The notes beneath the pieces were generated by a model that was not told the origin of the DNA, searched no databases, and was given only the letters and a program-made list of their open reading frames with translations. The position numbers were made by a program, and so were the translations under genes. Of a stretch of DNA of 64,000 nt, positions 1 through 36,690 are shown piece by piece; the first letter of the stretch is position 1, and each line of letters begins with the position of its first letter. Location of the stretch: positions 45,818,001 to 45,882,000 of the forward strand of contig NC_073391.1 in the NCBI RefSeq assembly GCF_028641065.1, written 5' to 3'. The stretch is from Leucoraja erinacea. Lineage: Eukaryota.

Positions 1-1099
1 GGAGCGCACGAGGCGACGGTTGGGTTCGCGCGGGAAGCGCGAGCGGTGGCGGTTGGGTTCGCGGGGTCTGGGGGTGAGGAGCGAGAGGGGGAAAGGTGAT
101 GGATGGTTTGAGTGGGAGGGTGATGAAGGAGGGCGGTGGAGGAACGGCAGAGAGGGAAGGGTGGTTGGAGGGGACGATGCTGCGTGCGGGAAGATGTTGG
201 GGGTGTTGTGAGGGGAAGGGTGGATGGCAACGTGAGGGGAGGGGTGGAGGGCTGAGGAAGTGGCTGGGAAATTGGGAGGTTGTGAGAGGATGTGGTTGTG
301 AAGGGAGGGGTGGATGATAGCGTGAAGGGAGGGTGGTGGGACTGTGAGGAGAGGAGAGGGGGGGGGGGAGGATTTGGGAGGTGTGAGCAAAAATACTAGA
401 GGAATACTCTGCTCTATAATCTTTGGTTGTGAGGGGAGAGGTGAGCGGACATGGTTGTGAGGATTGGGGATAATGGGAGGAGACTGTTGGAGGGACTGTT
501 GAATGCAGCGAAAAACAGGTGTGGGCCCAACAGGATAAACAGTGCGAATTGTGAAGAAAATGGACAGAAAAGTTTCTAACTGCGTACCCCATCTATATAA
601 CAGTTGCAAATGGCCAAGCTGCAGCAAGGAAGGTAAGGATGAAACGTTCCGATCCGAAACATCGCTTTATTCATTTTCTCCAGAGATGATGCCGCACTCG
701 CTGAGGTATTCCAGCATTTTTGTGTCTGTCTTCAGTATGAACATTGAATTCACCGATGTAAGGTCACAACACCCATTTCTCCCGCACCCCTCTCTGACCT
801 GTGGCCAACGTTCCTTCCCTCTGGCTTCACAATTGGCACCATTTGTTTTAATCTCTGGCCTTTATTCGAACCAACATCCCCCTCCCCCCGGTGCTCACCT
901 TCCAAGCTTTGTCCTTTTCCTCCTCTCTACCAGCCCCCGCCCCACCTACAATCAGTGGGCAGAATTGACCCAACTAGAAATCCACGGTGCCTGAGAATAC
1001 GCCTGACCAGCTGAGTTACACGAGCACTTTGTGTCTTTCTTTGGGATAACACTTTAATGTGAAGAATAAAAGTGCCCTTTACAGAGTACTAAGAAGTTT

Positions 1100-2185
1100 G
1101 TGATAAAAAATAGGCCAAAGTCAGCATGGTTTTGTGAAGGGGAGATCTTTGCCTGACGAATCTGCAAGAATTCTATGAGGATGGTAAATAGCAGGACAGA
1201 CAAAGGAGAGTCGGTGGATGTTGTTTACCGAGATTTTCAGAAAGCCTTTGATAAGGTGCCACACGTGAGGCTGCTAAGGAAGATGAAGCCATGGTATCAA
1301 AGGGCAGATACTAGCATGGTTGGCTGGATGGCAGAAGGCAAAGACTGGCAATAAAGGGGGCTTTTTCTGGTTGGCTGCCAGTGACTAGAAAAGTTCCGCA
1401 GGGGTCGGTGCTGGGGCCGCTTCTCATCACGTTGTATATTGATGATTTGGATGAGGGGATTGAAGACTTTGTGGCCAAGCTAGGTGGAGGGGCAGCTGGT
1501 GTAGAGGAAGCAGGAACTCCGCAGGACTTGGACAGGCTGGAAGAGTGGGCAGATAAAAAGTGGCAGATAGAATATAGTGCACAAAGTGTGGAGTCATGCA
1601 TTTTGGTAGTAGGAATAAAGGCGTAGATTATTTTCTAAATGAGTAATCGGTCGTAAAGAAGGCAAATATATGCCAGCATTTGTTTCAAGAGGGCTGGAAT
1701 ATGAAAACAGGGATGTATAAGGGAGGCTCTTGAATTCTCTGGCCAGGCTGCATTTGGTGAGGAATTTTGGGCAGCCTCAGAAGTCTGAAGAGGGGTCTCG
1801 ACCCGAAACGTTGCCTATTTCCTTCGCTCCATAGATGCTGCTTCACCCGCTGAGTTTCTCCAGCATTTTTGTCTACCTTTGATTTTCCACCATCTGCAGT
1901 TCCTTCTTAAACAACAGAATGAAAGGACATTCCTTTAGGATGGAGATGAGGAGGAATTTCTTTAGTCAGAGGATGATGAATCTGAAATTCTTTGCTACAA
2001 AAGGCTGTGGTGGCCAAGGCATTTGATATTTTTTACAGTAGAAATGGATTCTTGATTAGTATGGGTGTCAGTGGTTATGGTGAGAAGGAGGTTAGGAGGG
2101 TGAGATAGATCAGTCATGATCGAAATGTGGAGTAGACTTGATGGGCCGAATGGCCTAATTCTGCTCCCATCACATGACCTTATGA
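1100..2185 (+). mobile_element. Decayed CR1 LINE fragments
   Basis: VPQGSVLGPLL..YIDDLDEG translation and a CR1 3' end near 2100-2185. Confidence 0.8.
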
Positions 2186-2883
2186 CTCTCTCTGACCTAT
2201 GGCCCACCTGATTCACACCAGTTTCTCACATGTCCCTCCACCCACATTCCTTCCTCTGGCTTCACAATTGGCACCTTCTGTTTAAATCTCTTGACCTTTG
2301 TTCGAACCATCTGCCGCTCCCGTGTTCACTGATTGCCTTCCAAGCTTTGCTCTGCCCCTCCTCTCTCCCAGCTCTCTCCTCTTCCCCCCCCCCCCCCCCC
2401 CCCAATCGGTGTGCAGAATGGACCCGACCCAAAATGTCACCCATCCATGCTCTCCTGAGATACGCCTGTCCAGCTGAGTTACTCCAGCACTTTGTGTCCT
2501 TCTTTGGGATAATATAGCAGTGTGAGTGGGCGATTGATGTTCGGCGTGGAATCGGTGGGGAAAGGGACTGTTTCCATGCAGTGTCTTTCAATCGTTGAGC
2601 CGAATTGCAGGCACGTGTATAATGGGAAGTTGTGTAAACCGTGGCAAAGGAAATACAAAAATATTGCACCAGATTGATGGGAGGATATATACTGGAAGGG
2701 GCCAAATGGCCTCCCTGTGTACATTTCACGCACAGACACATTTTCGACAGAATACATTTATTAGTCACAAAGCTAGAATATTAAACTCCAGCCTTGTTAT
2801 TAACAGCCCAGTAATAGAATTAGAAACAACAGCAGAACAAACTCAGCAATGAACACCAGCAGCAACTGCAGAGTACAACTGCA

Positions 2884-3172
2884 GTCACGGTGGCGCAGCG
2901 GTTGCGTTGCTGCCTTACAGTGAATGCAGCGCCGGAGACCCGGGTTCGATCCCGATTACGGGTGCTGTCTGTACGGAGTTTGTACGTTCTCCCCGTGACC
3001 GGCATGGGTTTTTCCCCACATTCCAGACATATAAGTTTGTAGTGTAATCGGCTTGGTAAATGTAAAAATTATCCCTTGTGGGTGTAGGATAGTGTTAATG
3101 TGCGAGGATCACTGGTTGGCGAAGACCCGGTGGGCCGAAGGGCCTATTTCTGTGCTGTATCTCTAAACTAGA
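2884..3172 (+). mobile_element. tRNA-derived V-SINE (HE1-like)
   Basis: A box TGGCGCAGCGG, B box GGTTCGATCC, V-domain GGAGTTTGTACGTTCTCCCCGTG and tail GGGCCGAAGGGCCT..TCTCTAAACTA. Absent from the duplicate locus near 5405. Confidence 0.85.
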
Positions 3173-3256
3173 CCAGCAGTTACTTGTGGGCTTGCAACGG
3201 GATTCAACGACTGTGATGGTTAAACACAAAACCAAAAACTTATTAAAATTTTCCCC

Positions 3257-4306
3257 TCAGTGTGAATGTGAAATGGGAGAGGCAAATGGTTTCTCCACGG
3301 TATGAAGTCGCTGATGGGTCATCAGGTGGGAAAATCGTGTGAATCCTTTCCCACACCCAGTGCAGATGAACGGCCTCTCCCCAGTGTGAACTCTCTGGTG
3401 TCTGAGTAACGTAGATGAATGAATGAATCCCTTCCCACACTCGGAACAGGTGAACGACCTTTCCCCGGTGTGAATTTGCTGGTGTTTTATCAAGATGGTC
3501 GACCGAGTGAATCCCTTCCCACACTCAGAGCAGGTAAATGGCCTCTCCCCAGTGTGAACTAGCTGGTGGGTTTTCATGCTGGAGAACTTGGTAAATCCCT
3601 TCCCACAGGTAGAGCAGGTGAACGGCCTCTCCCCAGTATGAACTCGCTGGTGTGTCAGTAGGTCAGATGATCCAATGAATCCCTTCCCACACACAGAGCA
3701 GGTGAACGGCCTCTCCCCAGTGTGAACCCGCTGGTGTATCAGTAGCTCCGAAGATTGAATGAATCCCTTCCCACATTCAGAACAGGTGAACGGCCTCTCC
3801 CCAGTGTGAATTTGGTGGTGCCTCTTCAAATGGCATGCTTGAGTGAATCCCTTCCCACACTCGGGACAGGTAAATGGTTTCTCCTTTGTGTGAACTCGTT
3901 GGTGGGTCACCAGTTGGGAGGTATCAGTGAACCCCTGCCCACACACGGAGCAGGTGAACGGCCTCTCCCCAGTGTGAACTCGCTGGTGCCTCAGTAGCTC
4001 AGATGATCCAATGAATCCCTTCCCACACCCAGAACAGATGAACGGCCTTCCCCCGGTGTGAATTCGCTGATGTCTTTTCATGTGGATTAACTGAGCAAAT
4101 TGCTTCCCACACTCAGAACAGGTGAACGGCCTCTCCCCGGTGTGAGTTTGTCGGTGTCGATTCAGGTTGTACGTTTGAGTGAATCCCTTCCCACAATCGG
4201 GACAGACAAATGGTTTCTCCACAGGATGAACCTGCTGGTGGGGCATCAGGTGGGAAGGTTCAGTGAATCCCTGCCCATACACAGAGCTGGGGAATAATTT
4301 CTCCAT
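3257..4306 (-). CDS. C2H2 zinc-finger-only protein (ZNF-1), 11 fingers; duplicated exon with no promoter of its own
   Basis: ORF 3257..4324 has CxxC-x12-HxxxH repeats with HTGERPF linkers. First true ATG is at 4306 (agcATGg, MEKLF). Acceptor TTTTTACAG ends at 4392 and AATAAA is at 2757-2762 (minus). Confidence 0.85.
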   Translation of the reverse strand: MEKLFPSSVYGQGFTEPSHLMPHQQVHPVEKPFVCPDCGKGFTQTYNLNRHRQTHTGERPFTCSECGKQFAQLIHMKRHQRIHTGGRPFICSGCGKGFIGSSELLRHQRVHTGERPFTCSVCGQGFTDTSQLVTHQRVHTKEKPFTCPECGKGFTQACHLKRHHQIHTGERPFTCSECGKGFIQSSELLIHQRVHTGERPFTCSVCGKGFIGSSDLLTHQRVHTGERPFTCSTCGKGFTKFSSMKTHQLVHTGERPFTCSECGKGFTRSTILIKHQQIHTGERSFTCSECGKGFIHSSTLLRHQRVHTGERPFICTGCGKGFTRFSHLMTHQRLHTVEKPFASPISHSH

Positions 4307-5492
4307 GCTGTGAATGCCTCTCACACATTCAGGTGCTGGTGAACTGAATGAGTTTCAGATTCCCGGACACAAATCCTCTGCTTGTGCTACCCTGTAAAAA
4401 GAGATTACAACAAACATTAATAGGTAATGGTCAGTGTTTCACACAAAGTAATTTTAGTCTCTAATGGTGAGCACCGACATCACACAGAGACAGTGAGGCT
4501 GAAACTAAGCAGGGGGATCAAACCCTCATCTTTTCTCTGAGTTCCACATCAGAATTTGCTGACTTTCTTTCCGTCTGCAATGGAATGGGTCATTTCTGCC
4601 AATCACCTGCCTAATATTTGGCCCAGGTTTTCACTCCATCAATGACGGCAGCCTCGCCTTTTGGACAAGCCCCACATCACCACTATGAGCAACGCGACAT
4701 TTCCGTGGCTGGTGCAAGAGTTAAGTCAAGAGTGAGTCATTTGTCATTGTGACACATTTGTCATATGTCCCAAAACAGAACAATGAAATCCTTACTTGAA
4801 GTAGCACAACAGATAGTGTTTGGTAAACTGTTAGGATTGAAGGCAGATAAATCCGCAGGTCCTGCTGGTCTGCATCCCAGAGTACTCAAGGAGGTGGCCC
4901 AAGAAATTGTGGCTGCATTGGTGATCATTTTCCAATGTTCTCTCGACTCTGGATCAGTTCCTGTGGACTGGAGGGTAGCCAATGTAACTCCACTTTTTAA
5001 AGAAAGGAGGGAGAGCACTTTGTATCCTTCTTTGGGATAATATAACAATTGGCGATTGATGTTAGACGTGAAATCGGTGGGGAAAGGGACTGTTTCCATG
5101 CAGTATCTTTCAATCGTTAAGACGAGTAACGCATATGTATAATGGGAAGCTGTGTAAACCGAGGCAAAGGAAATACAAAAATATTGCAACTGATTGATGG
5201 GAGGATATATACTGGGAGGGGCCAAATGACCTCCCTGTGTACATTTCACACACAGACACATTTTCAGCAGAATACATTTATTAGTCACAAAGCTAGAATA
5301 TTAAACTCCAGCCTTGTTTTTAACAGCCAGTAATAGAATTAGAAACAACAGCAGAACAAACTTTGTCTTGGGTGTGATGAACATTAGCAGTAACCGCAGA
5401 GTCCAACACCAGTAGTCACTTGTGGGCTTGCAACTGGATTCAACGACAGTGATGGTTAAACATCGAACCAAAAACTTATTAGAATTTTCCCC

Positions 5493-7298: not shown

Positions 7299-7802
7299 GC
7301 TGTGAATGCCTCTCACACATTCAGGTGCTGGTGAACTGAATGCGTTTCAGATTCCCGGACACAAATCCTCTGCTTGTGCTACCCTGTAAAAAGAGATTAC
7401 AACAAACACTAATATGTAATGGTCAGTGTTTCAGACAAAGTAACTTTAGTCTCTAATGGTTTGCACTGACATCACACAGAGAGCAAGACTGAAACTAAGC
7501 AGGGGGATCAAACCCACATCTTTTCTCTGAGTTCCACATCAGAATTTGCTGACTTTCTTTCCGTCTGCAAAAGAGTGGGTAATTTCTGCCAATCACCTGC
7601 CTAATATTTGGCCCAGATTTTCACTCCATCAATGACGGCAGCCTCACCTTTTGGGCAAACCCCACATCACCACTATGAGCAACGCGACATTTCTGTGGCT
7701 GGTGCAAGAGTTAAGTCAAGAGTGAGTCATTTGTCATTGTGACACATTTGTCATATGTCCCAAAAACAGAACAATGAAATCATTACTTGAAGTAGCACAA
7801 CA

Positions 7803-10063: not shown

Positions 10064-10440
10064 TCCATGGCCGAATCTTTACCCACAACCCCACCGCGAG
10101 CCAGAAACCGGTCTATCCGTCAACGTGCTATCTTTGCGCACGCGCAGCCATGTCCGGCCGCCGTCAGCACCGTCACTGACGGGCGGGAAACTCCCTGGGG
10201 CCTGGGTGCGGAGGGAGAGGGGGAAGGACCGGCACCGTCCCCAGATGGGCGACCGTGTACCCGAGGATCGCACTGATTCTCCCCGCAGCTAGGGACCGCT
10301 CCTCAGGCAGGGACTCGGTGCTGACTGACCCTGCTCCTACCTGCCGCCGATCCTCCGGATCTTTGCTCCGGACTCTTTTGTCCACTGACCGCATGCGCGC
10401 CTTGGCCACACCACTTCCGGCTATCTGCGCATGCGCGAGA
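10064..10440 (-). promoter_or_regulatory. ZNF promoter/exon-1 module (serves ZNF-2 and possibly ZNF-1)
   Basis: Minus strand has CCGGAAGT (ETS), GCGCATGCG (NRF1-like, two copies), exon-1 sequence GGACAAAAGA..CCGGAGGATCGGCGGCAG and donor GTAGGA at 10340. Confidence 0.75.
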
Positions 10441-11329
10441 GAGAGGGGGCAGATCCGAATGAGAGACTGGACCGGCTGGGAGAAGGGGGGGTGGTGAAAG
10501 ACGTGCGTGTTTGTGTATTGCTCACAGATGTGTTTCGTTTAATATTCCGCGAGGAGCGCCAGGGTTTGCACGTTGGTTGGTTGTTTCCCCCCCCCTCCAG
10601 CCTGGGTGGAAGGATTGTCCTGCCGCTGGGGAGTTCCTGCAGAAACTGTCCAGGACATGCAGTGAAGCCGCCATAGCGAGTTCCTCTCTCCTCATCCATC
10701 TCCACATCTCTCCTCATCCATCTCCACATCTCTCTTCCCGCCGCATCGCCTTTACCTGCGGACAGGTAACGGGGAACGGGTTCCTCGGGAGTTAAGTTCA
10801 GCTGGAGTTAGCGCTTCTTCTCCGCGCTGGCTGTAGGCCTGAGGCCGCCATTGCTCCGGGTCGGTGCCCCGTCAGTCCAGGGTCACCCCGAACATCTCCA
10901 GCCGCCCCCGGGCAGGGATGGGACACTCGGGAGGCGATGGGGCCGGTAGTAAGACTACGCTCACAAATCTGTAGGAGATGGGTGCGTGATTCGCCCCTGT
11001 ATACTAATCTTGTATAACCCGGGAGGGCAGCCTTAGTGAGGTGGAACCCATACACCCAGGCTAAGGGGGTCGGGACCGTGATTCATTAGACTGTCACTGG
11101 TGAGATATCTGCATGGACCAGTGGAGAAGGGAGAACTAGTGTCGCTAACTCCAGTAGCGATTCAACAGCACTGGAGACCCAGTTCGATCCTGACTACGAA
11201 TGAAACGCAGGTCTGTATACGCAGCAGCTCAGCTGCCGAGAATGTTTATCTCCGGTGACCTATGACCAGGGCATGCGCAGTCAGAATACCAAACTCGCTT
11301 ATTAAACGCTGAAAGCTCACACAAACAAA

Positions 11330-13354: not shown

Positions 13355-14566
13355 CTACCCAGAGTTGGGAGAGGCAAACGATTTTTCCACAGCGTGAACT
13401 CGCTGGTGGGTCATCAGTTGGGAAAATTGTGTGAAACCCTTCCCACACTGAGAGCAAATGATCGGCCTCTCCCCGGTGTGAATTCTCTGATGTGTTATCA
13501 TGCTGGAGAACTTGGTAAATCTCTGCCCACACTCAGTGCAAGTGAACGGCTTCTCACCAGTGTGAACTCGCTGGTGTGTCAGTAGCTCAGATGATTGAAT
13601 GAATCCCTTCCCGCACTCATAACACGTGAACGGCCTCTCTCCCCTATGAATCTGCTGGTGCCTCTTCAGATTGCATGCTCGTGTGAATCCCTTCCCACAA
13701 TCAGGACAAGCAAATGGTTTCTCCAGAGTATGAACCTGTTGGTGTGTCACCAGGTGGGAAGATTGAGTGAATCCTTGCCCACACACAGAACAGGTGAATG
13801 GCCTCTCCCCAGTGTGAACTCGCTGGTGTGTTATCATGTTGGCTAACTGAGTGAATTCCTTCCCGCACTCAGAACACGTGAACGGCTTCTCCCCAGTATG
13901 AACACGTTGATGTCTTATCATGTTGGACAATTGGGTGAATTCCTTCCCACACTCAGAGCAGGTGAAAGGCCTCTCTCCGATGTGAATTTGCTGATGAGTT
14001 ATCATGTTGGACAACTGAGTGAATTCCTTCCCACATTCAGAGCAGGAGAACGGCCTCTCCCCAGAGTGAATTTGCTGATGTGTTATCATGTTCGACAGCC
14101 GAGTGAATTCTTTCCCACACTCAGAACAGGTGAATGGCCTCTCTCCACTATGAACTCGTTGGTGTCTCAGTAGCTCAGATGGTTGAATGAATCCCTTCCC
14201 ACACTCAGAGCAGGTGAACGGCCTCTCCCCAGTGTGAATTAGCTGATGCCTCTTCAGCTGGCATGCTCGGGAGAATCCCTTCCCACAATCTAAACAGGCA
14301 AATGGTTTCTCCAGAGAGTGAACCCGTTGATGTGTAACAAGGTGGGAGGATTGAGTGAATCCTTGACCACACAGAGCGCAGGTGAACGGCCTCTCCCCAG
14401 TGTGAACTCGCTGATGCGTTATCATGTTGGACAAACGAGCAAATCCCTTCCCACACTCAGAACAGGTGAACGGCCTCTCCCCGGTGTGAATTTTCTGGTG
14501 TCTCTTCAGGCTGCATGCTTGAGTGAATCCCTTCCCACAATCAAGACATGCAAATTGTTTCTCCAT
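13355..14566 (-). CDS. C2H2 zinc-finger-only protein (ZNF-3), 14 fingers
   Basis: 403-aa ORF. Acceptor at 14771-14772 and donor at 15005-15006 define a 236-nt intron. Poly(A) signal at 13005-13010. Confidence 0.88.
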   Translation of the reverse strand: MEKQFACLDCGKGFTQACSLKRHQKIHTGERPFTCSECGKGFARLSNMITHQRVHTGERPFTCALCGQGFTQSSHLVTHQRVHSLEKPFACLDCGKGFSRACQLKRHQLIHTGERPFTCSECGKGFIQPSELLRHQRVHSGERPFTCSECGKEFTRLSNMITHQQIHSGERPFSCSECGKEFTQLSNMITHQQIHIGERPFTCSECGKEFTQLSNMIRHQRVHTGEKPFTCSECGKEFTQLANMITHQRVHTGERPFTCSVCGQGFTQSSHLVTHQQVHTLEKPFACPDCGKGFTRACNLKRHQQIHRGERPFTCYECGKGFIQSSELLTHQRVHTGEKPFTCTECGQRFTKFSSMITHQRIHTGERPIICSQCGKGFTQFSQLMTHQRVHAVEKSFASPNSG

Positions 14567-14849: not shown

Positions 14850-15225
14850 ACCCACGGGCGGGAAATTCCCCGGGGCCCAGGTGCGGAGGGAAAGGGGGGA
14901 GGACCGGCACCGTCCTCAGGTGATGTGGACCCGAGGGCAGCCGGGGGCCGCTCCTCAGGCCGGGCCTCGGTGCTGACTGATCCCGCGCCCGGATCCCCGC
15001 TCCTACCCGCCGCCGATCCTCCGGAGTCTTTTGTCCACGGACCGCATGCGCGCCTTGGCAGCTCCTCTGGTATCTTTGGGCAGCACCACTTCCGGGGCTC
15101 TGCGCGCTTGGTATCGTCTGCAACAAAGACCCTAAGATCTTTGGTCTGCTACATAGGGCGAGTTCTGGGGCGCGGAGGTTTCTGGGCAATAAGGTCGCCA
15201 TAGAAATAATCTGAAATCACCGGCC
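14850..15225 (-). promoter_or_regulatory. ZNF promoter/exon-1 module (ZNF-3)
   Basis: Same conserved module, with donor at 15006 and ETS motif at 15088-15095. Confidence 0.78.
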
Positions 15226-15526
15226 CAGCGTTCCCCAATGTTTACCAGTGAGTCCGTGTTTTATTGCGGAGACATAGCAAGCAATGTTAAGCATGCTCCC
15301 ACAAGCAAGATACCACTGAATCTGTGTAAGAAGGAACTACAGGTGCTGGTTTAAACCGAAGATAGACCCAAAAAGCTGGAATATCTCAGCGGGACAGACA
15401 GCATCTCTGGAGAGAAGGAAAGGGTGACATTTCGGGTCGGAGCTGAAGAAGCGTCTCGACCTGAAACGTCACCCATTCCTTCTCTCCAGAGATGATGCTA
15501 GTCTCGCTGAGTGACTCCAGCTTTTT

Positions 15527-20017: not shown

Positions 20018-20430
20018 AGATCATTTCCATGGCGCCCTCTTTACCCAAAAACCTCCGCGCCCCAGAACTCGCCCTATGTTGCAGCCGATACCAAGCGCGC
20101 AGGCGCGGGGCCAAGGCGCGCATGCGGTCAATGGACAAAAGACCCCGGAGGATCGGCGGCGGGTAGGAGCGGGGATCCGGGCGCGGGATCAGTCAGCACC
20201 GAGGCCCGGCCTGAGGAGCGGCCCCCGGCTGCGGGGAGAATCGGTGCGGCCCCCGGCTGCGGGGAGAATCGGTGCGGTCCCCGGTGGCGTGAGCGCAGCG
20301 AATGCACGGCGGCGGATAGACCGGTTTCTCGCTCCCGGGGGCTTGTGGGCAAAGAGGCGGCCATGGGTAACACGCCGGCGCTTCACTGCCGATCCGTAGA
20401 GGGTTTTTGAGAGCGCAAACCTGGATCTCC
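20018..20430 (+). promoter_or_regulatory. ZNF promoter/exon-1 module (ZNF-4)
   Basis: CCATGGCGCC, TTTACCCAAAAACCTCCGCG, GCGCATGCG and donor at 20163. The ETS box is deleted in this copy. Confidence 0.78.
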
Positions 20431-23765: not shown

Positions 23766-23957
23766 CACTCATGATCTATGATCTTATGACATGATCTTAT
23801 GAAACCCGCAAGGTCGCAGGGAGAACATTAAAACTTGGCTGTGGGATTGCAGCAGCACCAGCTGCTGTGCCACTGTGACAACTTGTGTCCATGACATGGT
23901 GTACAATTCTTTATTTTAGTTCCCATGTAAAAGGACCAATTGGTTGTGGTCCGATGG

Positions 23958-24110
23958 CGAACGCTGAGCCGGTGATTTCAGATAACTGCCATGGCGCCTT
24001 CTTTACCCAGAAACCTCCGCGCCCCAGAACTCACCCTATGTTGCAGGCGACAACAAGCGCGCAGGCGCGGAGAGACCCCAAGCCGCGCATGCGGACAGAA
24101 GACTCCGGAG
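23958..24110 (+). promoter_or_regulatory. Truncated promoter module (ZNF-5) lacking the exon-1 donor
   Basis: The module is conserved up to GACTCCGGAG, then fuses to the intron-3' conserved block (cccaggcagaaggcgagggcttgttcc). Confidence 0.7.
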
Positions 24111-27124: not shown

Positions 27125-28676
27125 GCCGGGAAATGGTGTTAGGTAAATGGAATGGCTTAAAGGCCGATAAATCCCCAGGGCCAGATAAGTTGCATCCCAG
27201 AGTACTTAAGGAAGTAGCCGCAGAAATAGTGGATGCATTAGTGATAATTTTTCAAAACTCTTTAGATTCTGGAGTAGTTCCTGAGGACTGGAGGGTAGCT
27301 AATGTAACCCCACTTTTATAAAAGGGAGAGAGAGAGAAAACGGGGAATTACAGACCAGTTAGTCTAACATCAGTGGTGGGGAAAATTCTGGAGTCAGATA
27401 TTAAAGATGGGATAGCAGCACATTTGGAAAGTGGTGAATTCATTGGACAAAGTCAGCATGGATTTATGAAAGGTAAATCATGTCTGACGAATCTTGTAGA
27501 ATTTTTCGAGGATGTAACTAGTAGAGTGGATAAGGGAGAACCAGTGGATGTGTTATATCTGAACTTTCAGAAGGCTTTCGACAAGGTCCCACTTAAGAGA
27601 TTAGTATACAAACTTAAAGCACATGGTATTGGGGGTTCAGTATTGATGTGGATAGAGAGCTGGCTGGCAGACAGGAAGCAAAGAGTAGGAGTAAATGGGT
27701 CCTTTTCAGAATCGCAGGCAGTGACTAGTGGGGTACCGCAAGGCTCAATGCTGGGACCCCAGCTATTTACAATATATATTAATGATCTGGATGAGGGAAT
27801 TAAATGCAACATCTCCAAGTTTGCGGATGTCAAGAAGCTGGGGGCAGTGTTTAGCTGTGAGGAGGATGCCAGGAGGCTGCAAGGTGACTTGGATAGGTTG
27901 GTTGTCTGTTATCTGAATGGTGGCCGATTAGGAAAAGGGGAGATGCAACAAGACCTGGGTGTCATGGTACATCAGTCATTGAAAGTAGGCATGCAGGTGC
28001 AGCAGGCAGGGAAGAAAGCGAATGGTATGTTAGCATTCATAGCAAAAGGATTTGAGTATAAGAGCAGGGAGGTTCAACTGCAGTTGTACAGGGTCTTGGT
28101 GAGACCACACCTGGAGTATTTCGTACAGTTTTGGTCTCCTAATCTGAGGAAAGACATTCTTGCCATAGAGGGAGTACAGAGAAGGTTCACCAGACTGATT
28201 CCTGGGATGGCAGGACTTTCATATGAAGAAAGGCTGGATAGACTCGGCTTGTACAGGCTAGAATTCAGAAGATTGAGGGGGGATCTTATAGAAACGTACA
28301 AAATTCTTAAGGGGTTGGACAGGCTAGATGCAGGAAGATTATTCCCGATGTTGGGGAAGTCCAGAACTAGGGGTCACAGTTTAAGGATAAGAGGGAAGTC
28401 TTTTAGGACCAAGATGAGAAAATCATTTTTTACACAGAGAGTGGTGAATCTGTGGAATTCTCTGCCACAGAAGGTAGTTGAGGCACAGTTCATTGGCTAT
28501 ATTTAAGAGGGAGTTAGACGTGGCCCTTGTGGCTAAAGGGATCAGGGGGTATGGAGAGAAGGCAGGGATGGGATACTGAGTTGGATGATCAGCCATGATC
28601 ATATCGAATGGCGGTGCAGGCTCGAAGGGCCGAATGGCCTACTCCTGTACCTATTTTCTATGTTCTATGTCTATGT
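27125..28676 (+). mobile_element. 5'-truncated CR1/HER1 LINE with RT remnant
   Basis: ORFs 27070 and 27373..28506 contain QHGFMKGKSCLTNL, GVPQGS and FADV (catalytic FADD mutated). There is an internal deletion near 27900 and a 3' tail CCTACTCCTG..TTCTATGT. The paralog near 32925 has the empty site. Confidence 0.92.
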
Positions 28677-28944
28677 AACAATAAATCACCCATAAACACT
28701 AGTTCCATGTTATCTCTCTTTTGCTTCATACAATACACACAAACGGAATTTATAGTGACCAATTAATCTTTAAACCCATACTTCTTTGGGATGTGGATGG
28801 GAACCGGAGCACACAGAAGAGCGTTTGACGGCACTGGGCCTGTACTCGCTGGAGTTTAGAAGAATGAGGGGGGACCTCATTGACATGTATAGAATAGTGA
28901 ATGGCTTGGATATAGTGGATATGGAGAGGATGTTTCCACTAGAG

Positions 28945-29032
28945 TGATTGACTGTGTCGGCTGAGCCGACTAGCGCCAGCATGGAGAAATTATTCACCAC
29001 GTCTGCGGCAGGGCAAGGATTCAGCCAATCTC
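28945..29032 (+). pseudogene. 5' remnant of a deleted ZNF exon (paralog of the ZNF-5/7 start)
   Basis: gctgagccgac...agcATGGAGAAATTATTCACCACGTCTG...GGATTCAGCCAATCT matches 25440-25522, then joins directly to the upstream flank of the next promoter. Confidence 0.8.
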
Positions 29033-29534
29033 AACTGTTGCAAAACCCCAGCGATTTAGTTGATTTTTTTCCACACCATGAAATGATTTGATTTTCACAA
29101 ATAATTCAACGTATCGCGTGAGAGAGCTTGCCGTGTAAAATTGTCTGCTGAGACTCTTCACAATATGATCAAGTGGCTGTTTAGCCAGTGATTTCAGATC
29201 ATGTCCATGGCGCCCTCTTTACCCAGAAACCTTCGCTCCCCAGAACTCGCTCTATGTTGCAGGCGACAACAAGCGCGCAGGCGCGGAGACCCGGAAGTGA
29301 TGCGGCCAAGACGCGCATGCGGTCCGTGGACAAAAGACTCCGGAGGATCGGCGGCGGGTAGGAGCGGGGATCCGGGCGCGGGATCAGGCAACACCGAGGC
29401 CCCGGCCTGAGGAGCGGCCCCCGGCTGCGGGGAGAATCGGTGCGGCCCTCGGGGACACGGTGGCCCGTCACGTGCTGGTCCTTCTCTCCCTTCGGGCCCC
29501 GGGGAGTTTCCCGCCCATCAGTGACGCTGCTGAC
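29033..29534 (+). promoter_or_regulatory. ZNF promoter/exon-1 module (ZNF-6); continues at 30847-31030 after the transposon
   Basis: Full motif set including CCGGAAGT, with donor at 29358. Colinear with 40740-41325. Confidence 0.78.
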
Positions 29535-30846
29535 CAAAGATCTTATAGCGGAGCAAGATAGGCTACTCCTGCTAAATGCAATGGACTGACGTGTAGTACG
29601 CTATGGAGGGGGATCATGGGCATTTTCCACGCCCATTTTAGCAACCTGAGCCTACCTAACCCGACCCGACTCGCACTGTAATCAATGTTGCGGGGCAACA
29701 GTTTGTGTGGGTCAGATTCATAAATCTGTCAGTTCAAACTTCTTGTCAAGAATAAAATTTGATTCTGGTAATTGTCTTTTTTAATGTTTTTTAAATCATT
29801 TCTTTTTAAATGGCTCACAAGCCGTGTTTGAGTTGGTTTTGTAGTAACCGGAACCGACCGACTCGCAGGGTGATTGACAGGGGGGACTTTTTGTGCGTGA
29901 TTATAGGGTTAGATTCATAATTCAATTAGTTCATAATTCTGTTGATTCTTGTTAAGGAATAAAATGTTTATAAACACACATACATGAAATTATATAAATG
30001 TCTATAGCACACACAATTATATTTCTTCTAAACCAATAATGAACTTTATTTCAGACTAGACAAGGGACATTAAATAAGAAACATTGTAAATAAGAAACAT
30101 TGTCTTGGGGCACTCTCTCTCCCCGCTGCCCCGGGCCCCGCACTCTCTCTCCCCGCACTCTCTCTCCGGCCCCGGGCCCCGCCCCACACTCCTTCTCCCC
30201 GCTGCCCCGGGCCCCGCACTCCCTCTCCCCGCTGCCCCGGGCCCCGCACTCCCTCTCCCCGCTGCCCCGGGCCCCGCACTCTCTCTCCCCGCTGCCCCGG
30301 GCCCCGCACTCCCTCTCCCCGCTGCCCCGGGCCCCACACTCTCTCTCCCCGCTGCCCCGGGCCCCGCACTCTCTCTCCCCGCTGCCCCGGGCCCCGCGCT
30401 CCTCTCCCCGCTGCCCCGGCCCCACACTCTCTCTCCCCGCTGCCCCGGGTCCCGCACTCTCTCTCCCCGCTGCCCCGGGTCCCGCACTCTCTCTCCCCGC
30501 TGCCCCGGGCCCCGCACTCTCTCTCCCCGCTGCCCCGGGCCCCGCACTCTCTCTCCCCGCTGCCCCGGGCCCCGCACTCTCTCTCCCCGCTGCCCCGGGC
30601 CCCACACTCTCTCTCCCCGCTGCCCCGGGCCCCGCACTCTCTCCCCGCTGCCCCGGGCCCCACACTCCTTCTCCTCGCTGCGGATCCAATCTTTGGCCGG
30701 AAGCAAGAAGGCGGGAGCAAGATGGCGGAACAAGATGGCGGAGTCAGCTTGCTAAAATGTGTCCTGTAATTACCCATGAAACCGCCCATGAGCGTACCTC
30801 ACGTTTGCGTGAGAGTAACCTATCTTGCTTCGCTCTAAGATCTTTG
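29535..30846. mobile_element. Non-autonomous DNA transposon, P-element-like (CAAAG termini, 8-bp TSD)
   Basis: Left end CAAAGATCTTATAGCGGAGCAAGATAGG versus right-end reverse complement CAAAGATCTTAGAGCGAAGCAAGATAGG (26/28). TSD CTGCTGAC at 29527-29534 and 30847-30854. The paralog near 41220 has the empty site. No transposase ORF. Confidence 0.88.
30110..30675. repeat. GC-rich ~30-bp minisatellite inside the P-like element
   Basis: About 19 copies of CACTCTCTCTCCCCGCTGCCCCGGGCCCCG. This explains the repetitive ORFs in five frames. Confidence 0.95.
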
Positions 30847-31471
30847 CTGCTGACGGCGGCCTAACCAGGCGACGCATGCGCAACGATTGCACGGTGACGG
30901 ATAGACCGGTTTCTGGCTCGCGGGGTGTTGTGGGTAAAGACAGGGCCATTGTTCACACACCGGCGATTCACTGCCGATCCGCAGAGGGTGTGCGGCAGCG
31001 CAAACATGGATTCCCTGGCCCCCAAAGGGTCTGATCGGTCGTTACAAGGAACTGCGGATGCGTCTGAAGGGAAAAAGACAAAAAATCTATATTTTTTAAA
31101 AGGGCTATTCTCAATTTTGGGGGGCGTCCATTACCAGGGACCACAGTCTCAAACACACTTTTTCACCCAGAGAGTTGTGAATTTGTGGAATCCTTTGCCA
31201 CAGAAGGCAGTGGAGGCCAATAAGAGAGTTCGGTATTCAAAAAAACACAAGGAATCATGGGAGTTGTCAACAGTCATTCCTCGCTGTCACGGAGTGGTGA
31301 CATATTTCACCATAGAGACAAAAATCACCTTGCCTGAAACACTGATCTTTACTTATTAATTTTATTGTAATTTCTTTTTACAGGATGGAACAGGCAGAGC
31401 ATTTGTTTACGGGATTCTCAAACGGAGTCACTGTGTCAACTTAGCCGACCAGACACCAGATAGTTCACAGC

Positions 31472-32251
31472 ATGGATAAATTATTCACCAGCTCGCAGTG
31501 TGGGCAGGGATTCACTCAATCTTCCCACCAGCAAGATGAAACTGTGGTGAAACCACTTGCCTGTTCCGATTGTGGGAATGGATCCACTCAAGCAAGCCAT
31601 CTGAAGGGACACCAGCAAATTCACACTGGGGAGAGGCCATTCACCTGCTTCGAGTGTGCAAAGAAATTCACTAATTCTTCCAGTCTGGTGGCCCACCAAC
31701 GGATTCACACTGGAAAGAAACCATTTCCCTGTCCCGATTGTGGGAAGGCATTCACTCGAGCAAACAACCTCCAAAGGCACCAGCAAATCCACACTGGAGA
31801 GAGGCCGTTCATATGTTCTGAGTGCGGGAAGGGATTCATTCAATCCGCTGAGCTACTGAGACACCAGCATGTTCACACTGGGGACAGGCCATTCACCTGT
31901 TGTGAGTGTGGCAAGGGATTCATTCAATCTTCCCACCTGGGGACCCATCAGCGAATTCACAGCGTGAAGAGACTGTTCACCTGTTGTGAGTGTGGGAAGG
32001 GATTCATTCAAGCATGCAACCTGAAGAGGCACCAGCTAACTCACACCGGGGAGAAGCCATTCACCTGCTCTGAGTGTGGGAAAAGATTCACTGATTCATC
32101 TGAGTTACAGAGGCACTTCAGAATTCACACTGGGGAGAAGCCATTCACCTGCTCTGAGTGTGGGAAGGGATTCAGTCAATCTTCCAACCTGCAGACCCAT
32201 CTGCGAATTCACAGCGTGGATAAATCATTTGCCTCTTCCAACTGTGGGTAA
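31472..32251 (+). CDS. C2H2 zinc-finger-only protein (ZNF-6), 8 fingers
   Basis: 259-aa ORF. Acceptor at 31382-31383, donor at 29358, AATAAA at 32689-32694. Confidence 0.85.
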   Translation: MDKLFTSSQCGQGFTQSSHQQDETVVKPLACSDCGNGSTQASHLKGHQQIHTGERPFTCFECAKKFTNSSSLVAHQRIHTGKKPFPCPDCGKAFTRANNLQRHQQIHTGERPFICSECGKGFIQSAELLRHQHVHTGDRPFTCCECGKGFIQSSHLGTHQRIHSVKRLFTCCECGKGFIQACNLKRHQLTHTGEKPFTCSECGKRFTDSSELQRHFRIHTGEKPFTCSECGKGFSQSSNLQTHLRIHSVDKSFASSNCG

Positions 32252-34529
32252 GATTTCATTGGTAAATCTAACCTGGTGATCCACGAGATAATTAATGCTG
32301 GGGAGAAGCCATTCACCTGTCTTGTGCCTGGGAAGGGATTCATTTGAATATCTGGGCTATTGGCGCACACACTGAGTGGAAAGTTGAAATACATTTTTTG
32401 TTTTCATGTTAGTGCTGATGTTTGTTACACATAGGACTGAACCATGGTCCTTGGGCAAAGTTTGTACTGATGTCAGTAACTTGGTTTACTGGACTGGAGT
32501 TTAATATCTGTGACAAATCAAGATCAAGAGAGTTTATTGTCATGTGTCCCAGATAGGACAATAAAATTCTTGCTTTGCTTCAGCACAACAGAATATTGGA
32601 GGCATAAATAAATACAGAATAGATCAGTGTGTCCATATACCACATATTGGTTAACTGGACTGGAGTTTAATATCCTGAGTCTGTGACAAATAAATGTGTT
32701 CTATTGTAAACCCTGTGTCGTCTGTCTGCAATGTACATGGAGAGGTTTTTCGGCCCATCTGGTCCCTGTCAGTATTTTATCTTCCACCACTCTGTTGGAA
32801 TATTTTTGTATTTCTTTGTCCTCTGTTTTCTCAATTTCCCATTAAGTAAATGTCTGTTATTCATCTCAATTTGATTGAAAGACAAAACTTGGAAAGAGGC
32901 CCTTTGGCCCACCGAGTTCATGCCAACTATAGATCACCCATAAACACTAGTTCCATGTTATCTCTCTTTTGCTTCAAATATCTTTATTGTCATTTCCTGA
33001 GTATTCACATACCCAGAGGAAACAAAAAAAAACGTTGCTCAACCAGTGTCCATTCAGTGTGCATTAAAAATAAATAGAAATAAAAATACATATATCATGA
33101 ACAAATTTAACACTCTACTAAACATTCAACAGGCGTTCCGATCGGCAGCGGCACAACAGTGGCTCTGCTGCAGTGTGTCCAGTATATGGTTGGTAGTGAA
33201 TGGCTTGGCAAAGTCCGTTTATGTCTTATAGCCTGCGGGAAGAAGCTGTGGAGAGAGTCTAGAGCTAATGCTCCTAGTCTCCCAGATGGCAGGAGGAGAA
33301 TTGTGATGAAATAGGTGGTAGGGGAATTTCTGATGGGTGAATCTGCTGATAATCTCTTCATTGCCACAGAAAGGGAGTGAAGCACATGTCCTGTGGGCGG
33401 TCTTCAAGGTAAAGAGATAGATTGAAAGGTCTCTTTTGCCCTTCCAATCCCTTATCTCTCTTTTGCTTCAAATCCCTTCATACGTATGGAATTTACAGAG
33501 ACCTTTTACATTAATCTTTAAACCCATACTTCTTAGGGATGTGGAAAGTAACCGTAGCATAATAGAGGAGGGTTTTACGGCACTGGGCCTGTACTCGCTG
33601 GAGTTTTGAAGAATGAGAGGGAATCTCATTGAAATATATAGATTAGTGAATGGCTTGGATAGAGTGATGTGGATAGGATGTTTCCACTAGGTGGGAGAGT
33701 CTAGAACTAGAGGTCATAGTCTCAGAATTAAAGGAAATTCTTTTAGGAAATAGTTAAGGAGGAATTTCTGTAGTGGTGAATCTGTGGAATTCATTGCCAC
33801 AGAAAGCAATGAAGGCCATGTCAGTGGATATATTTAAGGTAAAGAGATAGATTGAAAGGTCTCAACCCTAAACGTCACCCATGAACTTCTCTCCAGAGAC
33901 CTGCTGTCCCGCTGAGTTACTCCAGAGATTCACCTATCTTTGATAAATTGTTGATTGGTATCATGGCACAGGTTTTAAAGGCAGGAGAATGGGGTTATCC
34001 TAGAAACATAGACCCTGGGTGCAGAAGACCATTCGGCCCATCGAGCCTGCAATCCATTCAATATGATCTAGCTGATCATCCCCTTAAGTATCCCGTACCT
34101 TTCTATAAGATCCCCTCTCAATCTCCTAAATTCTAGAGAGTATAAACCAAGTCTATCCAGTCTTCCTTCATAAGACAGTCCTGACATCCCAGGAATCAGT
34201 CTGGTGAACCTTCTTCTATGGCAATAATGTCCTTCCTCAGATTTGGAGACCAAAACTGTACGCAATACTTGAGAGGGAAAGGTAGATTGGCTATGATTGA
34301 TTAGTGGAGTAGACTCGATGGGCAGATTTCTGCTCTAAGAACCTATGACCAGGCGTTATGGGGAGAATTCTGTCAGTGGATAGATTAATGATTAGTTCAG
34401 GTATCAGAGGTTATGGGGAGAATGGGGTTAGGAGGGAGAGATTGATCAGCCATGATTGAATGAGAGTGGACTTGATAAGACAAATGGCCTAATTTTCCTC
34501 CTATCACTCATGATCTATGATCTTATGAC

Positions 34530-35780
34530 ATGTTCATTGATTTCAGATCTGCCTTCAACACTGTCATCCCCGCTAGCTTGATCACCAAACTCAGCGGACT
34601 TGGCATCCACCTCCCTCTGCAATTGGACACTGGATTTCCTCACCAACAGACCACAGTCTGTTAGGGTCAACAACCTCACCTCCTCCACTATAACACTGAA
34701 CACGCGTGCCACAGGGCTGTGTGCTCAGCCCTCTCCTCTACTCCCTCTTCACCCATGACTGCATCCCTAAGAATGGCTCCAACGCCATCATTAAATTTGC
34801 CGACGACACCACGGTTGTAGGACTGATCAGTGACAACGACGAGTCAGCCTACAGGGAGGAGGTCCAGCACCTGACAACCTGGTGTGAAAAAATGAAATGA
34901 AATGATTCAATTTATTGTCATTGTCAGTGTACAGTACAGAGACAACGAAATGCATTTTTAGCATCTCCCTTGAAAGGGAGACACAGGGCGTCGCGGTGTG
35001 CCCGCGCCTGCCGCTGTGCCAACAATAACCTCATCCTCAACTCCAAGAAGACAAAGGAAATTATTGTTGACTTCAGGAAGAACAGAGGGGGCAGACATAC
35101 TCCCCATCCATATAAACGGGACTGAGGTGGAGCGCGTCTCCAACTACAAATTGCTCGGGGTACACATCTCGGAGGATCTGTCCTGGTCCTTCAACACCTC
35201 CAAGCTGATCAAAAAGGCGCAGCAGCGCCTTTACTTCCTGAGGAGGCTCAAGAAAGCTCACCTGTCCCCCCTCACCTGTCCCCCCAGATCCTGACCAACT
35301 TTTGCCGCTGTACCATCGAAAGCACCCTGACCACCTGCTTCATGGTATGGTACAGCAGTTGCACCGTAGCGGACAGGAAGGCACTGCAACGGGTGGTGAA
35401 AACTGCACAGTACATCATCGGTGCTCCCGCTCCCTGCCATGGATGCCCTCCACCGAAAACGGTGTCTGAGACGGGCCGGGAAGATCATCAAATACCCCTC
35501 CCACCCTAACCATGGACTGTTTGCCCTCCTCCCATCAGGGAGGCGGTACAGGAGCCTCAGGTCTCGTACTAGTAGGATGAGGAACAGCTTCTACAACAAC
35601 ACTATCACATTGCTGAACTCGGAGTCCCGCCGATAGATTTGTCCAGTCTCTCCGTCCACATTGTTTGCTTATTCTGTATTTTTATTTCTATATTGCACTA
35701 TTACTACGGACTGACGCTAAACTGCATTTCGTTGTACCCATACTTGTATCTGTGCAATGACAATAAAGTTGAATTGAATG
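34530..35780 (+). mobile_element. Rex1/L2-type LINE fragment with RT motifs
   Basis: [35 protein letters not shown] and LLPSGRRYR, with frameshifts. 3' tail AATAAAGTTGAATTGAA. Confidence 0.88.
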
Positions 35781-35919
35781 ATCTTATGAAACCCGCAAGG
35801 TCACAGGGAGAGCATTAAAACTTACCTGTGGTTTTGCAGCAGCACCAGCAGCTGTGCCACTGTGACAACTTGTGTCCATGCCCTGGTTTATAATTCTTTC
35901 GTTTATTTCCCATGAAAAG

Positions 35920-36690
35920 ACGGCGAATGCTGAGCCGGTGATTTCAGATAATTTCCATCAAAGATTATAGAGCAGTGGTTCCCAACCTTTTTTTGGCCAT
36001 GCCCCATCTAAACACCTCTAAAATCCTGATGCCCCCCCCCCCCCCATGTGTTTATATAATTCTTTCATTTAAAAAGTCAAAATTCTGAAACATAAACTAC
36101 ATGGAAAAAAAAAATACGGCGACCCAGCTGAGTCCGCTCAATTGCCCCCCTTATTTGCAGATCATTTGAGAACCACTGTTATAGAGGATCTTTGATTTCC
36201 ATGGCGCCTTCTTTACCCAGAAACCTCCGCGCGCTGGAACTCGCCCTATGTTGCAGGCGACACCAAGCGCGCAGGCGCCGTGCGGCCAAGGCGATCATGC
36301 GGTCCGTGGACAAAAGACTCCGGAGGATCGGCGGCGGGTAGGAGCGGGGATCCGGGCGCGGGATCAGTCAGCACCGAGGCCCCGGCCTGAGGAGCGGCCC
36401 CCGGCTGCGGGGAGAATCGGTGCGGTCCCCGGCGGCGTGAGCGCATCGAATGCACGGTGACGGATGTTCTGAAGGAGGGTCTCGACCCGAAACGTCGCCA
36501 ATTCCTTCGCCCAATAAAATGCACCTCCAGCATGTTGTGTCTACCGTCGATTTTACCGGCATCTGCAGTTCTTTCTTAAACGGTGACGGATAGACCGGTT
36601 TCTCGCTCCCGGGGGCTTGTGGGCAAAGAGGCGGCCATTGCTTCATTGCCGAACCGCAGAGCGTTTTTTGGAGCGCAAAGCTGGATCTCC
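35920..36690 (+). promoter_or_regulatory. ZNF promoter/exon-1 module (ZNF-7)
   Basis: Conserved module interrupted at 35959-36194. Donor at 36338. Confidence 0.76.
35973..36178. mobile_element. hAT (Charlie-type) MITE
   Basis: Ends CAGTGGTTCCCAA...TTGAGAACCACTG with 8-bp TSD TTATAGAG at 35965-35972 and 36179-36186. Confidence 0.88.

What the first reader, a model, noticed from the sequence alone, without database searches (positions are those of the whole stretch)
380..36202. Five P-element-type excision footprints, four of them inside ZNF promoters
Seen: tiny inserts made only of the terminal bases of the CAAAGAT... element, flanked by ~8-bp duplications. Four are absent from paralogous promoters: 10360-10365 (tctttg between ctccgga and ctccggac), 15065-15078 (ctctggtatctttg; ggcagctc/ggcagcac), 15124-15143 (caaagaccctaagatctttg; gtctgcaa/gtctgcta) and 35959-36194 (caaagattatagag+gatctttg; atttccat twice, later hit by a hAT MITE). 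The fifth is 388-425 (caaaaatactagagg..ctctataatctttg; ggtgtgag/gttgtgag). Known: Drosophila P transposase makes 17-nt staggered cuts, so end-joining leaves up to ~17 nt of each TIR plus the TSD, and P elements prefer promoters. Inference: a vertebrate P-like family repeatedly jumped into and out of these open promoters, changing the spacing between NRF1, ETS and other motifs.
Basis: partly seen in the sequence, partly recalled or inferred. Interest (0 to 1): 0.82.

Follow-up and report, generated by a model that had tools for sequence, protein, structure and literature searches.

The report
Transposon excision scars in ZNF promoters
Several zinc-finger gene promoters in this (reportedly skate) genome carry tiny scars, made only of the end bases of a jumping gene plus the 8-base target duplication, which show that the element repeatedly jumped in and out; the cutting pattern looks like that of the fruit-fly P element, but the enzyme family could not be checked here.

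Summary
All five inserts are in the sequence as described. A complete 1312-bp non-autonomous member of the family lies at 29535-30846, with a 34-nt TIR and an exact 8-bp TSD.

In an alignment of 9 paralogous CpG-island ZNF promoters, each promoter insert is private to one paralogue. The full element also sits in such a promoter.

Four scars are solid: 388-425, 15065-15078, 15124-15143 and 35959-36194. The last carries a nested MITE. The 6-nt one at 10360 could equally be a decayed 15-bp tandem duplication.

Stubs keep 0-14 nt per end; site 1 keeps 14+10+14. No copy of intermediate size exists in the window. Five of 6 family insertions lie in 6.4% of the window.

My reading is excision footprints of a cut-and-paste family that leaves long TIR stubs, as P elements do and hAT elements do not. 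P-superfamily membership is untested.

The scan had already noted the same phenomenon in other windows of this genome, including two follow-up reports. I found no paper describing it.

The parts
380..433 (.). S1: TSD GGTGTGAG / GTTGTGAG around a 38-nt remnant (388-425). It consists of a 14-nt left stub CAAAAATACTAGAG, 10 central nt, and a 14-nt right stub (reverse complement CAAAGATTATAGAG). It lies in G-rich non-promoter DNA.
10353..10373 (.). S2: 13 extra bases relative to 8 paralogues. They can be read as a 6-nt stub TCTTTG plus a 7-8-bp TSD. Equally, they can be read as a decayed tandem duplication of the local 15-mer, seen in promoter orientation as CAAAAGA+CTCCGGAG.
   Evidence: contigs of two other organism labels span it without a 13-nt deletion
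15057..15086 (.). S3a: TSD GGCAGCTC / GGCAGCAC around a one-sided 14-nt stub (15065-15078, reverse complement CAAAGATACCAGAG). The other element end is lost completely, exactly at the TSD boundary.
   Evidence: present, with G>A at 15069, in contigs of another organism label
15116..15151 (.). S3b: TSD GTCTGCAA / GTCTGCTA around a 20-nt remnant (15124-15143). It has 6 nt of one end (CAAAGA) and 12-14 nt of the other (reverse complement CAAAGATCTTAGGG).
35951..36202 (.). S4: exact TSD ATTTCCAT on both sides of a 22-nt remnant, made of 14 nt CAAAGATTATAGAG plus 8 nt GATCTTTG. The remnant was later split by a 206-bp MITE (35973-36178, ends CAGTGGTTC...GAACCACTG) with its own exact TSD TTATAGAG.
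29527..30854 (.). Full non-autonomous family member, 29535-30846 (1312 bp). It has a 34-nt TIR (91%), a further 61-nt subterminal inverted repeat (70%), an exact TSD CTGCTGAC, and a 30-bp minisatellite at about 30110-30660. It is inserted in a ZNF promoter paralogue; the paralogue at about 41210-41230 is the empty site.
10090..10460 (-). Promoter-like CpG island, paralogue A10 (GC 0.66, CpG o/e 0.90). It lies upstream of minus-strand C2H2 ORFs.
14850..15240 (-). Promoter-like CpG island, paralogue B15 (GC 0.64, CpG o/e 0.81). It lies upstream of the minus-strand C2H2 ORF 13355-14566.
36195..36650 (+). Promoter-like CpG island, paralogue F36 (GC 0.63, CpG o/e 1.12). It lies upstream of the C2H2 ORF 37549-38526. 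S4 sits at its upstream edge, with paralogous sequence on both sides.

Best explanation
The tiny inserts are donor-site scars of a cut-and-paste DNA transposon family. The family has TIRs starting CAAAGAT, up to 34 nt long, and makes an 8-bp TSD.

Copies inserted into the open, CpG-rich promoters of tandemly duplicated C2H2 zinc-finger genes after those promoters had duplicated. This is shown: each insert is private to one paralogue.

The elements were then cut out by transposase, and the break was closed by end joining (inferred). Both TSD copies were kept, together with 0-14 nt of each element end (shown). S1 additionally has 10 nt that look like filler.

For that many end bases to stay at the donor, the strand that is not transferred must be cut well inside the TIR, at least 14 nt in. 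That is the geometry of P-element transposase, which makes a 17-nt stagger. It is not the geometry of hAT, MULE or Transib enzymes, which make a hairpin on the flank (inferred).

The family is therefore most likely P-like in mechanism and probably in ancestry. Ancestry was not tested.

The net effect is small, fixed indels of +13 to +30 bp. These shift the spacing of NRF1-like and ETS-like motifs in individual paralogues.
For: - Element ends abut the TSDs exactly at every junction.
- Inserts are private to 1 of 9 aligned paralogues, and an empty site exists for the full element.
- There are seven 14-nt TIR-end matches against 0.45 expected, and 3 TSD-flanked CAAAG..CTTTG pairs against 0.22 expected.
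- Sizes are 6, 14, 20, 22 and 38 nt versus 1312 bp, with nothing between.
- S3a, and S2 if it is real, have lost one end exactly at the TSD boundary. A transposase cut does this; random deletion does not.
- Five of the 8 ends scored (S2 left out, and the missing end of S3a counted as 0 nt) are 14 nt long. The S3b stub matches the full element's TIR for only 12 of its 14 nt.
- Five of 6 insertions lie in promoter CpG islands that make up 6.4% of the window, binomial 6e-6.
- P transposase makes a 17-nt stagger and prefers promoters (passages of PMC7776569, and of PMC10983969).
- hAT, MULE and Transib enzymes form the hairpin on flanking DNA (passages of PMC5499845).
- The scars are old and fixed. 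Contigs from other organism labels carry S2 and S3a.
Against: - No transposase, THAP signature or autonomous copy is in the window, so nothing links CAAAGAT TIRs to a P transposase. No scan note that I could retrieve makes that link either.
- CAAAG fits the hAT terminal consensus YARNG (recalled).
- Four of the 6 TSDs fit nTnnnnAn. The target pattern GT....AC is shared by P (ATRGTCCGGACWAT), Hermes and hobo.
- hAT elements also favour open chromatin (recalled).
- S1 is 38 nt, more than 2x17.
- S2 may be a tandem duplication.
- The sample is only five sites. Selection against large promoter inserts could enrich for tiny remnants whatever the mechanism.
- No allele or species with a filled site was seen. 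However, only 15 of 573 joints were listed, and two of the three other-organism runs had no contig over S3a.
Confidence: 0.6

Rival explanations
1. The family is hAT, or another superfamily with an 8-bp TSD. On this view the tiny remnants are extreme internal-deletion derivatives made by interrupted gap repair after excision (synthesis-dependent repair from the sister copy, joined at microhomology). Selection then kept only the smallest ones in promoters.
For: - CAAAG fits YARNG (recalled).
- The TSD is 8 bp, and 4 of 6 TSDs fit nTnnnnAn.
- hAT non-autonomous families are far commoner in vertebrates than P (recalled).
- A hAT-like MITE hit the same promoter.
- There is no P transposase in the window.
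Against: - Both breakpoints would have to fall within 19 nt or less of the ends of an element of at least 1.3 kb, in 4-5 independent events. No intermediate sizes are present.
- One-sided remnants end exactly at the TSD boundary.
- hAT cleavage leaves no element bases at the donor.
Confidence: 0.2
2. Loss without transposase. On this view the long inverted repeats of a small MITE (34-nt TIR plus 61-nt subterminal repeat) formed hairpins. These were cut or skipped during replication, deleting the interior and leaving short palindromic stubs.
For: The full copy has long inverted ends. S1, S3b and S4 are near-palindromic. The TIR contains the palindrome AAGATCTT.
Against: S3a (14+0) and S2 (6+0) are not palindromic, and they have lost one end exactly at the TSD junction. 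Slippage deletions should end at short direct repeats, not at the element boundary.
Confidence: 0.1
3. Chance resemblance or ordinary small indels and duplications, with no transposon involved. This is a serious option only for S2.
For: - S2's 13 extra bases closely resemble the preceding local 15-mer: 13 matches with 2 one-base gaps.
- The crude 7-mer control gave only P=0.023.
- Three other CAAAG/CTTTG-ended candidates (35044, 37005, 54547) look like chance.
Against: - Seven 14-nt TIR matches were found against 0.45 expected.
- Three TSD-flanked pairs were found against 0.22 expected.
- The inserts are exact private indels in the paralogue alignment.
- A bona fide full element with the same ends lies in the same promoter family.
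Confidence: 0.05

Closest known systems
Drosophila melanogaster P-element excision footprints (17-nt staggered donor cleavage, repair by end joining)
   Same: Both have an 8-bp TSD, kept on both sides of the scar. Both leave remnants made only of terminal TIR bases, often asymmetric. Both insert preferentially at promoters (passages of PMC7776569). The targets here resemble the P target motif; for example, GTCCGGAG at S2 against GTCCGGAC.
   Different: These are germline-fixed fossils in a vertebrate rather than laboratory events. The TIR sequence is unrelated. The longest clear stub here is 14 nt, not 17, and S1 totals 38 nt, which exceeds 34. The transposase is unknown.
Zebrafish Pdre2 / THAP9 P-like elements
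   Same: They are a vertebrate cut-and-paste family with an 8-bp TSD, short TIRs starting with CA, subterminal inverted repeats and internally deleted copies (passages of PMC10983969, and of PMC7776569).
   Different: The Pdre2 TIR is 13 bp (CATACCTGTCAAC), unlike the 34-nt TIR here. The passages I read describe no genomic footprints or promoter scars. The host here is a cartilaginous fish according to the scan's notes.
hAT elements (Hermes, hobo, Ac/Ds, Tol2)
   Same: They share the 8-bp TSD and the target pattern GT....AC / nTnnnnAn. The TIR start fits YARNG (recalled). They commonly occur as MITEs.
   Different: hAT transposases make a hairpin on the flanking DNA, so footprints alter the TSD junction and carry no TIR bases (passages of PMC5499845). 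Here up to 14 TIR bases per end remain.
Tc1/mariner canonical footprints
   Same: The scars consist of terminal element bases left by a staggered cut, flanked by the TSD.
   Different: Those footprints keep only 2-3 nt per end, and the TSD is TA (recalled). Here 6-14 nt per end remain and the TSD is 8 bp.

Membership tests
P-element superfamily | 8-bp target site duplication | tested here: met
   The TSD is exact at the full element and at S4. There is 1 mismatch in 8 at S1, S3a and S3b.
P-element superfamily | Terminal inverted repeats with subterminal inverted repeats | tested here: met
   The TIR is 34 nt and 91% complementary. A further 61-nt inverted repeat is 70% complementary.
P-element superfamily | Autonomous copies with the same TIRs encode a THAP-domain, RNase-H-fold transposase with a GTP-binding insertion | not testable with these tools
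   No transposase was found among the 17 long ORFs scanned: 11 are C2H2 arrays, 1 is an RT and 5 have no family. A metagenome scan for the TIR gave 0 hits.
P-element superfamily | Donor footprints keep both TSD copies plus up to about 17 nt of each TIR | tested here: met
   S3a keeps 14+0 nt, S3b 14(12)+6 and S4 14+8. S1 keeps 14+10+14 = 38 nt, which exceeds 34 unless the middle is filler. S2 (6+0) is ambiguous. This is indirect: cleavage itself was not observed.
P-element superfamily | Palindromic GC-rich target motif (ATRGTCCGGACWAT in Drosophila) | tested here: inconclusive
   By eye, about 46 of 84 positions over 6 sites match, against about 24 expected. The same sites fit Hermes GTGNNCAC about equally well, at about 20 of 36 (motifs; counted by hand, not by a script).
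hAT superfamily | 8-bp TSD with nTnnnnAn, and TIR ends YARNG | tested here: met
   Four of 6 TSDs have T2 and A7. CAAAG fits YARNG; that consensus is recalled, not taken from a call.
hAT superfamily | Excision by a hairpin on flanking DNA, so footprints carry no element bases | tested here: not met
   The remnants keep 6-14 TIR bases per end. The mechanism is taken from passages of PMC5499845.
Internally deleted non-autonomous copies (MITE-like) | Both ends are retained, and sizes are spread continuously | tested here: not met
   S3a, and S2 if real, lack one end. Sizes are 6-38 nt and then 1312 bp, with none between, among 572 pairs tested. The sample is small.

The most novel reading that the evidence does not exclude
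These scars would be germline fossils of a vertebrate P-superfamily transposase that, like the fly enzyme, cuts the non-transferred strand 14-19 nt inside the TIR. The cleavage stagger of an extinct or uncharacterised vertebrate transposase could then be read directly from genome sequence. Repeated insertion and excision at CpG-island promoters would be a distinct, recurrent source of small spacing changes between transcription-factor motifs in an expanding ZNF gene cluster.
Probability: 0.45. Interest if true: 0.7.

Novelty: new member of a known kind. Interest (0 to 1): 0.5.

Why it matters
If the P assignment holds, the long staggered cut that sets P transposase apart from other DDE enzymes is conserved from flies to cartilaginous fish. 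It could also be measured without biochemistry, from the per-end length cap of fossil footprints.

The finding also shows a concrete way in which transposons remodel promoters without staying there. Each visit leaves 13-30 extra bases between NRF1-like and ETS-like sites in one paralogue of a fast-evolving ZNF cluster.

The phenomenon was already noted by this scan in other windows of the same genome. This window therefore adds a clean paralogue-controlled example, with empty, filled and scarred sites in one gene family, rather than a first sighting.

Tried and rejected
- Generic scan for 8-bp flanking repeats around 5-45-nt inserts. It returned 3646 candidates dominated by minisatellites and was not useful as a statistic. 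It printed 7 CAAAG/CTTTG-ended candidates: 4 are the named sites, and 3 (35044, 37005, 54547) look like chance.
- Per-7-mer control. It gave only P=0.023, and I dropped it as too noisy.
- Search for other short inserts with inverted ends and a TSD. It gave 2 in the window: S3b, and one at 20383 that looks like chance.
- THAP regular expression over six frames: nothing found.
- Pfam on 17 ORFs: no transposase.
- Search for further copies of the nested MITE. It gave 2 matches, which are its own two ends, against 2.86 expected, so there is no second copy here.
- Reads. They were dominated by repeats and paralogue cross-mapping. Of 10919 RNA reads laid, 9781 were only 90-95% alike, and no begin or end places were reported. 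I therefore have no TSS evidence and saw no filled or empty allele. Only 15 of 573 joints were listed, so absence is not shown.
- Scan-notes look-up by sequence: blank, which means nothing.
- Metagenome scan for the 28-nt TIR: 0 hits. I did not use the second scan that was allowed.
- Paper searches for P-type footprints in vertebrates or cartilaginous fish, and for the TIR letters. No relevant paper was found. One search hit only primers in unrelated papers.
TE libraries in the supplements of skate or shark genome papers could name this family.
- I considered direct insertion of TIR-only micro-elements. I rejected it because one-sided stubs cannot transpose.
- I considered templated filler at a random break. 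I rejected it because it would not make an 8-bp TSD.

Full report
**The observation**

The five inserts are in the sequence at the stated places.

- S1: an 8-mer GGTGTGAG / GTTGTGAG flanks a 38-nt insert at 388-425.
- S2: 7 to 8 bases CTCCGGA(C) flank TCTTTG at 10360-10365.
- S3a: GGCAGCTC / GGCAGCAC flank a 14-nt insert at 15065-15078.
- S3b: GTCTGCAA / GTCTGCTA flank a 20-nt insert at 15124-15143.
- S4: exact ATTTCCAT copies at 35951-35958 and 36195-36202 flank CAAAGATTATAGAG ... GATCTTTG.

In S4, a 206-bp MITE (35973-36178) lies between exact TTATAGAG copies. The pre-MITE remnant was therefore 22 nt.

**The parent family**

The window holds one complete member of the family, at 29535-30846 (1312 bp).

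- Its TIRs are 34 nt long and 91% complementary, starting CAAAGATCTTA.
- A further 61-nt subterminal inverted repeat is 70% complementary.
- The TSD CTGCTGAC is exact.
- It carries a 30-bp minisatellite and has no coding capacity that Pfam recognises.

**Control from paralogues**

A self-BLAST found about ten copies of one promoter-like region. I aligned nine of them and left out a partial copy at 23955-24110.

In the MAFFT alignment, S2, S3a, S3b, S4 and the full element are each present in exactly 1 of the 9 sequences. The indel boundaries are the ones the TSDs predict. The paralogue near 41210-41230 is an empty site for the full element.

**Are these promoters?**

- The regions are CpG islands: GC 0.62-0.67 and CpG o/e 0.81-1.12, against 0.49 and 0.53 for the whole window.
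- They carry NRF1-like CGCATGCG and ETS-like CCGGAAGT motifs. The motif names are recalled.
- Each lies 0.4-4 kb upstream of a C2H2 zinc-finger ORF in the right orientation.
- Of 17 long ORFs scanned, 11 are C2H2 arrays, 1 is a reverse transcriptase and 5 have no family.
- A transcription start was not shown. The RNA run laid gave mostly 90-95% cross-mapping reads and no start sites.

**Chance**

- The 14-mer CAAAGATNNTAGAG with at most one mismatch occurs 7 times, all at these sites. The expectation is 0.45, and 0 of 100 shuffles reach 7. I derived the pattern from these same sites, so this test is partly circular.
- Of 572 CAAAG...CTTTG pairs 10-8000 bp apart, 3 have an 8-bp flanking repeat with at most one mismatch, against 0.22 expected. 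They are S3b, S4 and the full element.
- Only 2 inserts of 10-60 nt in the window combine a TSD with perfectly inverted 5-nt ends: S3b, and a likely chance case at 20383.
- Two cruder tests were weak because minisatellites inflate the background (P=0.023).

**S2 is ambiguous**

In promoter orientation, 8 paralogues read ...CAAAAGA CTCCGGAG GATC.... Paralogue A10 reads ...CAAAAGA GTCCGGAG CAAAGA TCCGGAG GATC....

This can be read in two ways:
- a 6-nt TIR stub with a 7-8-bp TSD; or
- a tandem duplication of the 15-mer, followed by two 1-nt deletions and one substitution.

I cannot decide between them.

**Anatomy of the scars**

| Site | Bases kept per end |
|---|---|
| S1 | 14 + 10 unmatched + 14 (or 19 + 19) |
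| S2 | 6 + 0 |
| S3a | 14 + 0 |
| S3b | 14 (12 matching the full element's TIR) + 6 |
| S4 | 14 + 8 |

- Leaving S2 out and counting S3a's missing end as 0 nt, 5 of the 8 ends are 14 nt long. The S3b stub counts as 14 by position, but only 12 of those match the full element's TIR.
- The central 10 nt of S1 contain a copy of AATACT from its own left stub. They could be templated filler, but this is speculation.
- No copy between 39 and 1311 bp exists in the window.
- In S3a one element end is lost exactly at the TSD boundary while the TSD is kept. A transposase cut at the element end produces this; random deletion does not.

**Location**

By my delimitation the promoter paralogues total 4082 bp, 6.4% of the window. 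Five of the 6 family insertions lie in them (binomial 6e-6). Without S2 it is 4 of 5 (8e-5).

S4 sits at the upstream edge of its paralogue. I counted it as inside because paralogous sequence flanks it on both sides. A second, unrelated MITE also hit that site, which fits open chromatin.

**Age**

Runs carrying other coded organism labels hold this stretch.

- A contig of X7 (10205-10489; 5 differences, 8 gap letters) and one of X9 (10166-10525; 9 differences, 9 gap letters) span S2 without a 13-nt deletion.
- Two contigs of X3 cover 15069 inside S3a, with G>A.
- X7 and X9 had no contig over that place.
- No joint at the sites was among the 15 of 573 joints listed.

At least S2 and S3a therefore predate the split of these labels. 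No filled or empty allele was seen, but absence is not shown.

**Mechanism**

The exact element/TSD junctions, the private indels and the bimodal sizes make excision scars the best reading. I put this at about 0.8.

The retention of up to 14 TIR bases needs a cut deep inside the TIR.

- P transposase cuts with a 17-nt stagger and favours promoters. I read passages of PMC7776569 and PMC10983969.
- hAT, MULE and Transib enzymes form a hairpin on the flank, so no element bases stay. I read passages of PMC5499845.

That argues for a P-like mechanism.

**Membership of the P superfamily is a separate question and was not testable**

- There is no transposase or THAP signature in the window.
- A metagenome scan for the TIR gave 0 hits.
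- CAAAG fits the hAT end consensus (recalled).
- The targets (GT....A.) fit the P motif ATRGTCCGGACWAT and the hAT motifs of Hermes and hobo equally well (passages of PMC2577343; my count was by hand).

I put P membership at about 0.55.

**Earlier notes and literature**

The scan's notes call this genome a skate. They list many first-reader notes of the same kind and two follow-up reports that also concluded P-type scars. One note reports a bounded P element with a THAP transposase elsewhere in the genome.

None of the notes I could retrieve ties CAAAGAT ends to that transposase. I treated these notes as leads only.

Six paper searches found no description of such footprints in a vertebrate genome.

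**Verdict**

The excision-scar reading and the promoter bias are supported in this window. The P-type label is plausible but unproven. The case is a new member of a known kind, and this scan has already seen it elsewhere in the same genome.

Noticed in passing
window 35973-36178: A 206-bp MITE with ends CAGTGGTTCCCAA...TTGAGAACCACTG and an exact 8-bp TSD TTATAGAG is inserted inside the older 22-nt scar. It is hAT-like by its ends and TSD; that consensus is recalled. There is no second copy in the window.
   Followed up: partly
window 30110-30660: A 30-bp minisatellite of about 18 units (unit close to CCCGCTGCCCCGGGCCCCGCACTCTCTCTC) makes up 40% of the 1312-bp element. It resembles the promoter's own GGCCCCCGGCTGCGGGGAGA segment in inverted orientation (pairs I3-I20).
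   Followed up: no
window 30697-30741, and TIR positions 19-28 at both ends: A motif GCAAGA(T/A)GGCGG is repeated three times in tandem about 105-150 bp from the right end. A related GCAAGATAGG lies inside each TIR. These could be transposase-binding sites. The motif also looks like a YY1 site (recalled).
   Followed up: no
window 30683-30695: An internal CCAATCTTTGGCC lies at the border of the minisatellite. It could be the decayed end of an older nested copy, but no matching left end or TSD was found.
   Followed up: partly
window 27373-28506: This ORF has a reverse-transcriptase domain (RVT_1, E=8e-18). It is a LINE fragment between ZNF genes.
   Followed up: no
window 56480-56760: Promoter paralogue J56 carries about 280 bp of private sequence, including a second partial copy of the GGAGGATCGGCGG...GGGATCAGTCAG block. 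It is an internal duplication or another insertion.
   Followed up: no
window 15323-15500: This is an extremely high-copy repeat. Summed contig depth was in the millions in all three DNA runs, and RNA read depth was about 1200 per strand. It is probably a SINE-like element shared by all organism labels.
   Followed up: no
window 15069: In contigs of another organism label the S3a stub reads with A instead of G. That brings it closer to the S1 left stub, so the stub sequence has drifted since the scar formed.
   Followed up: no
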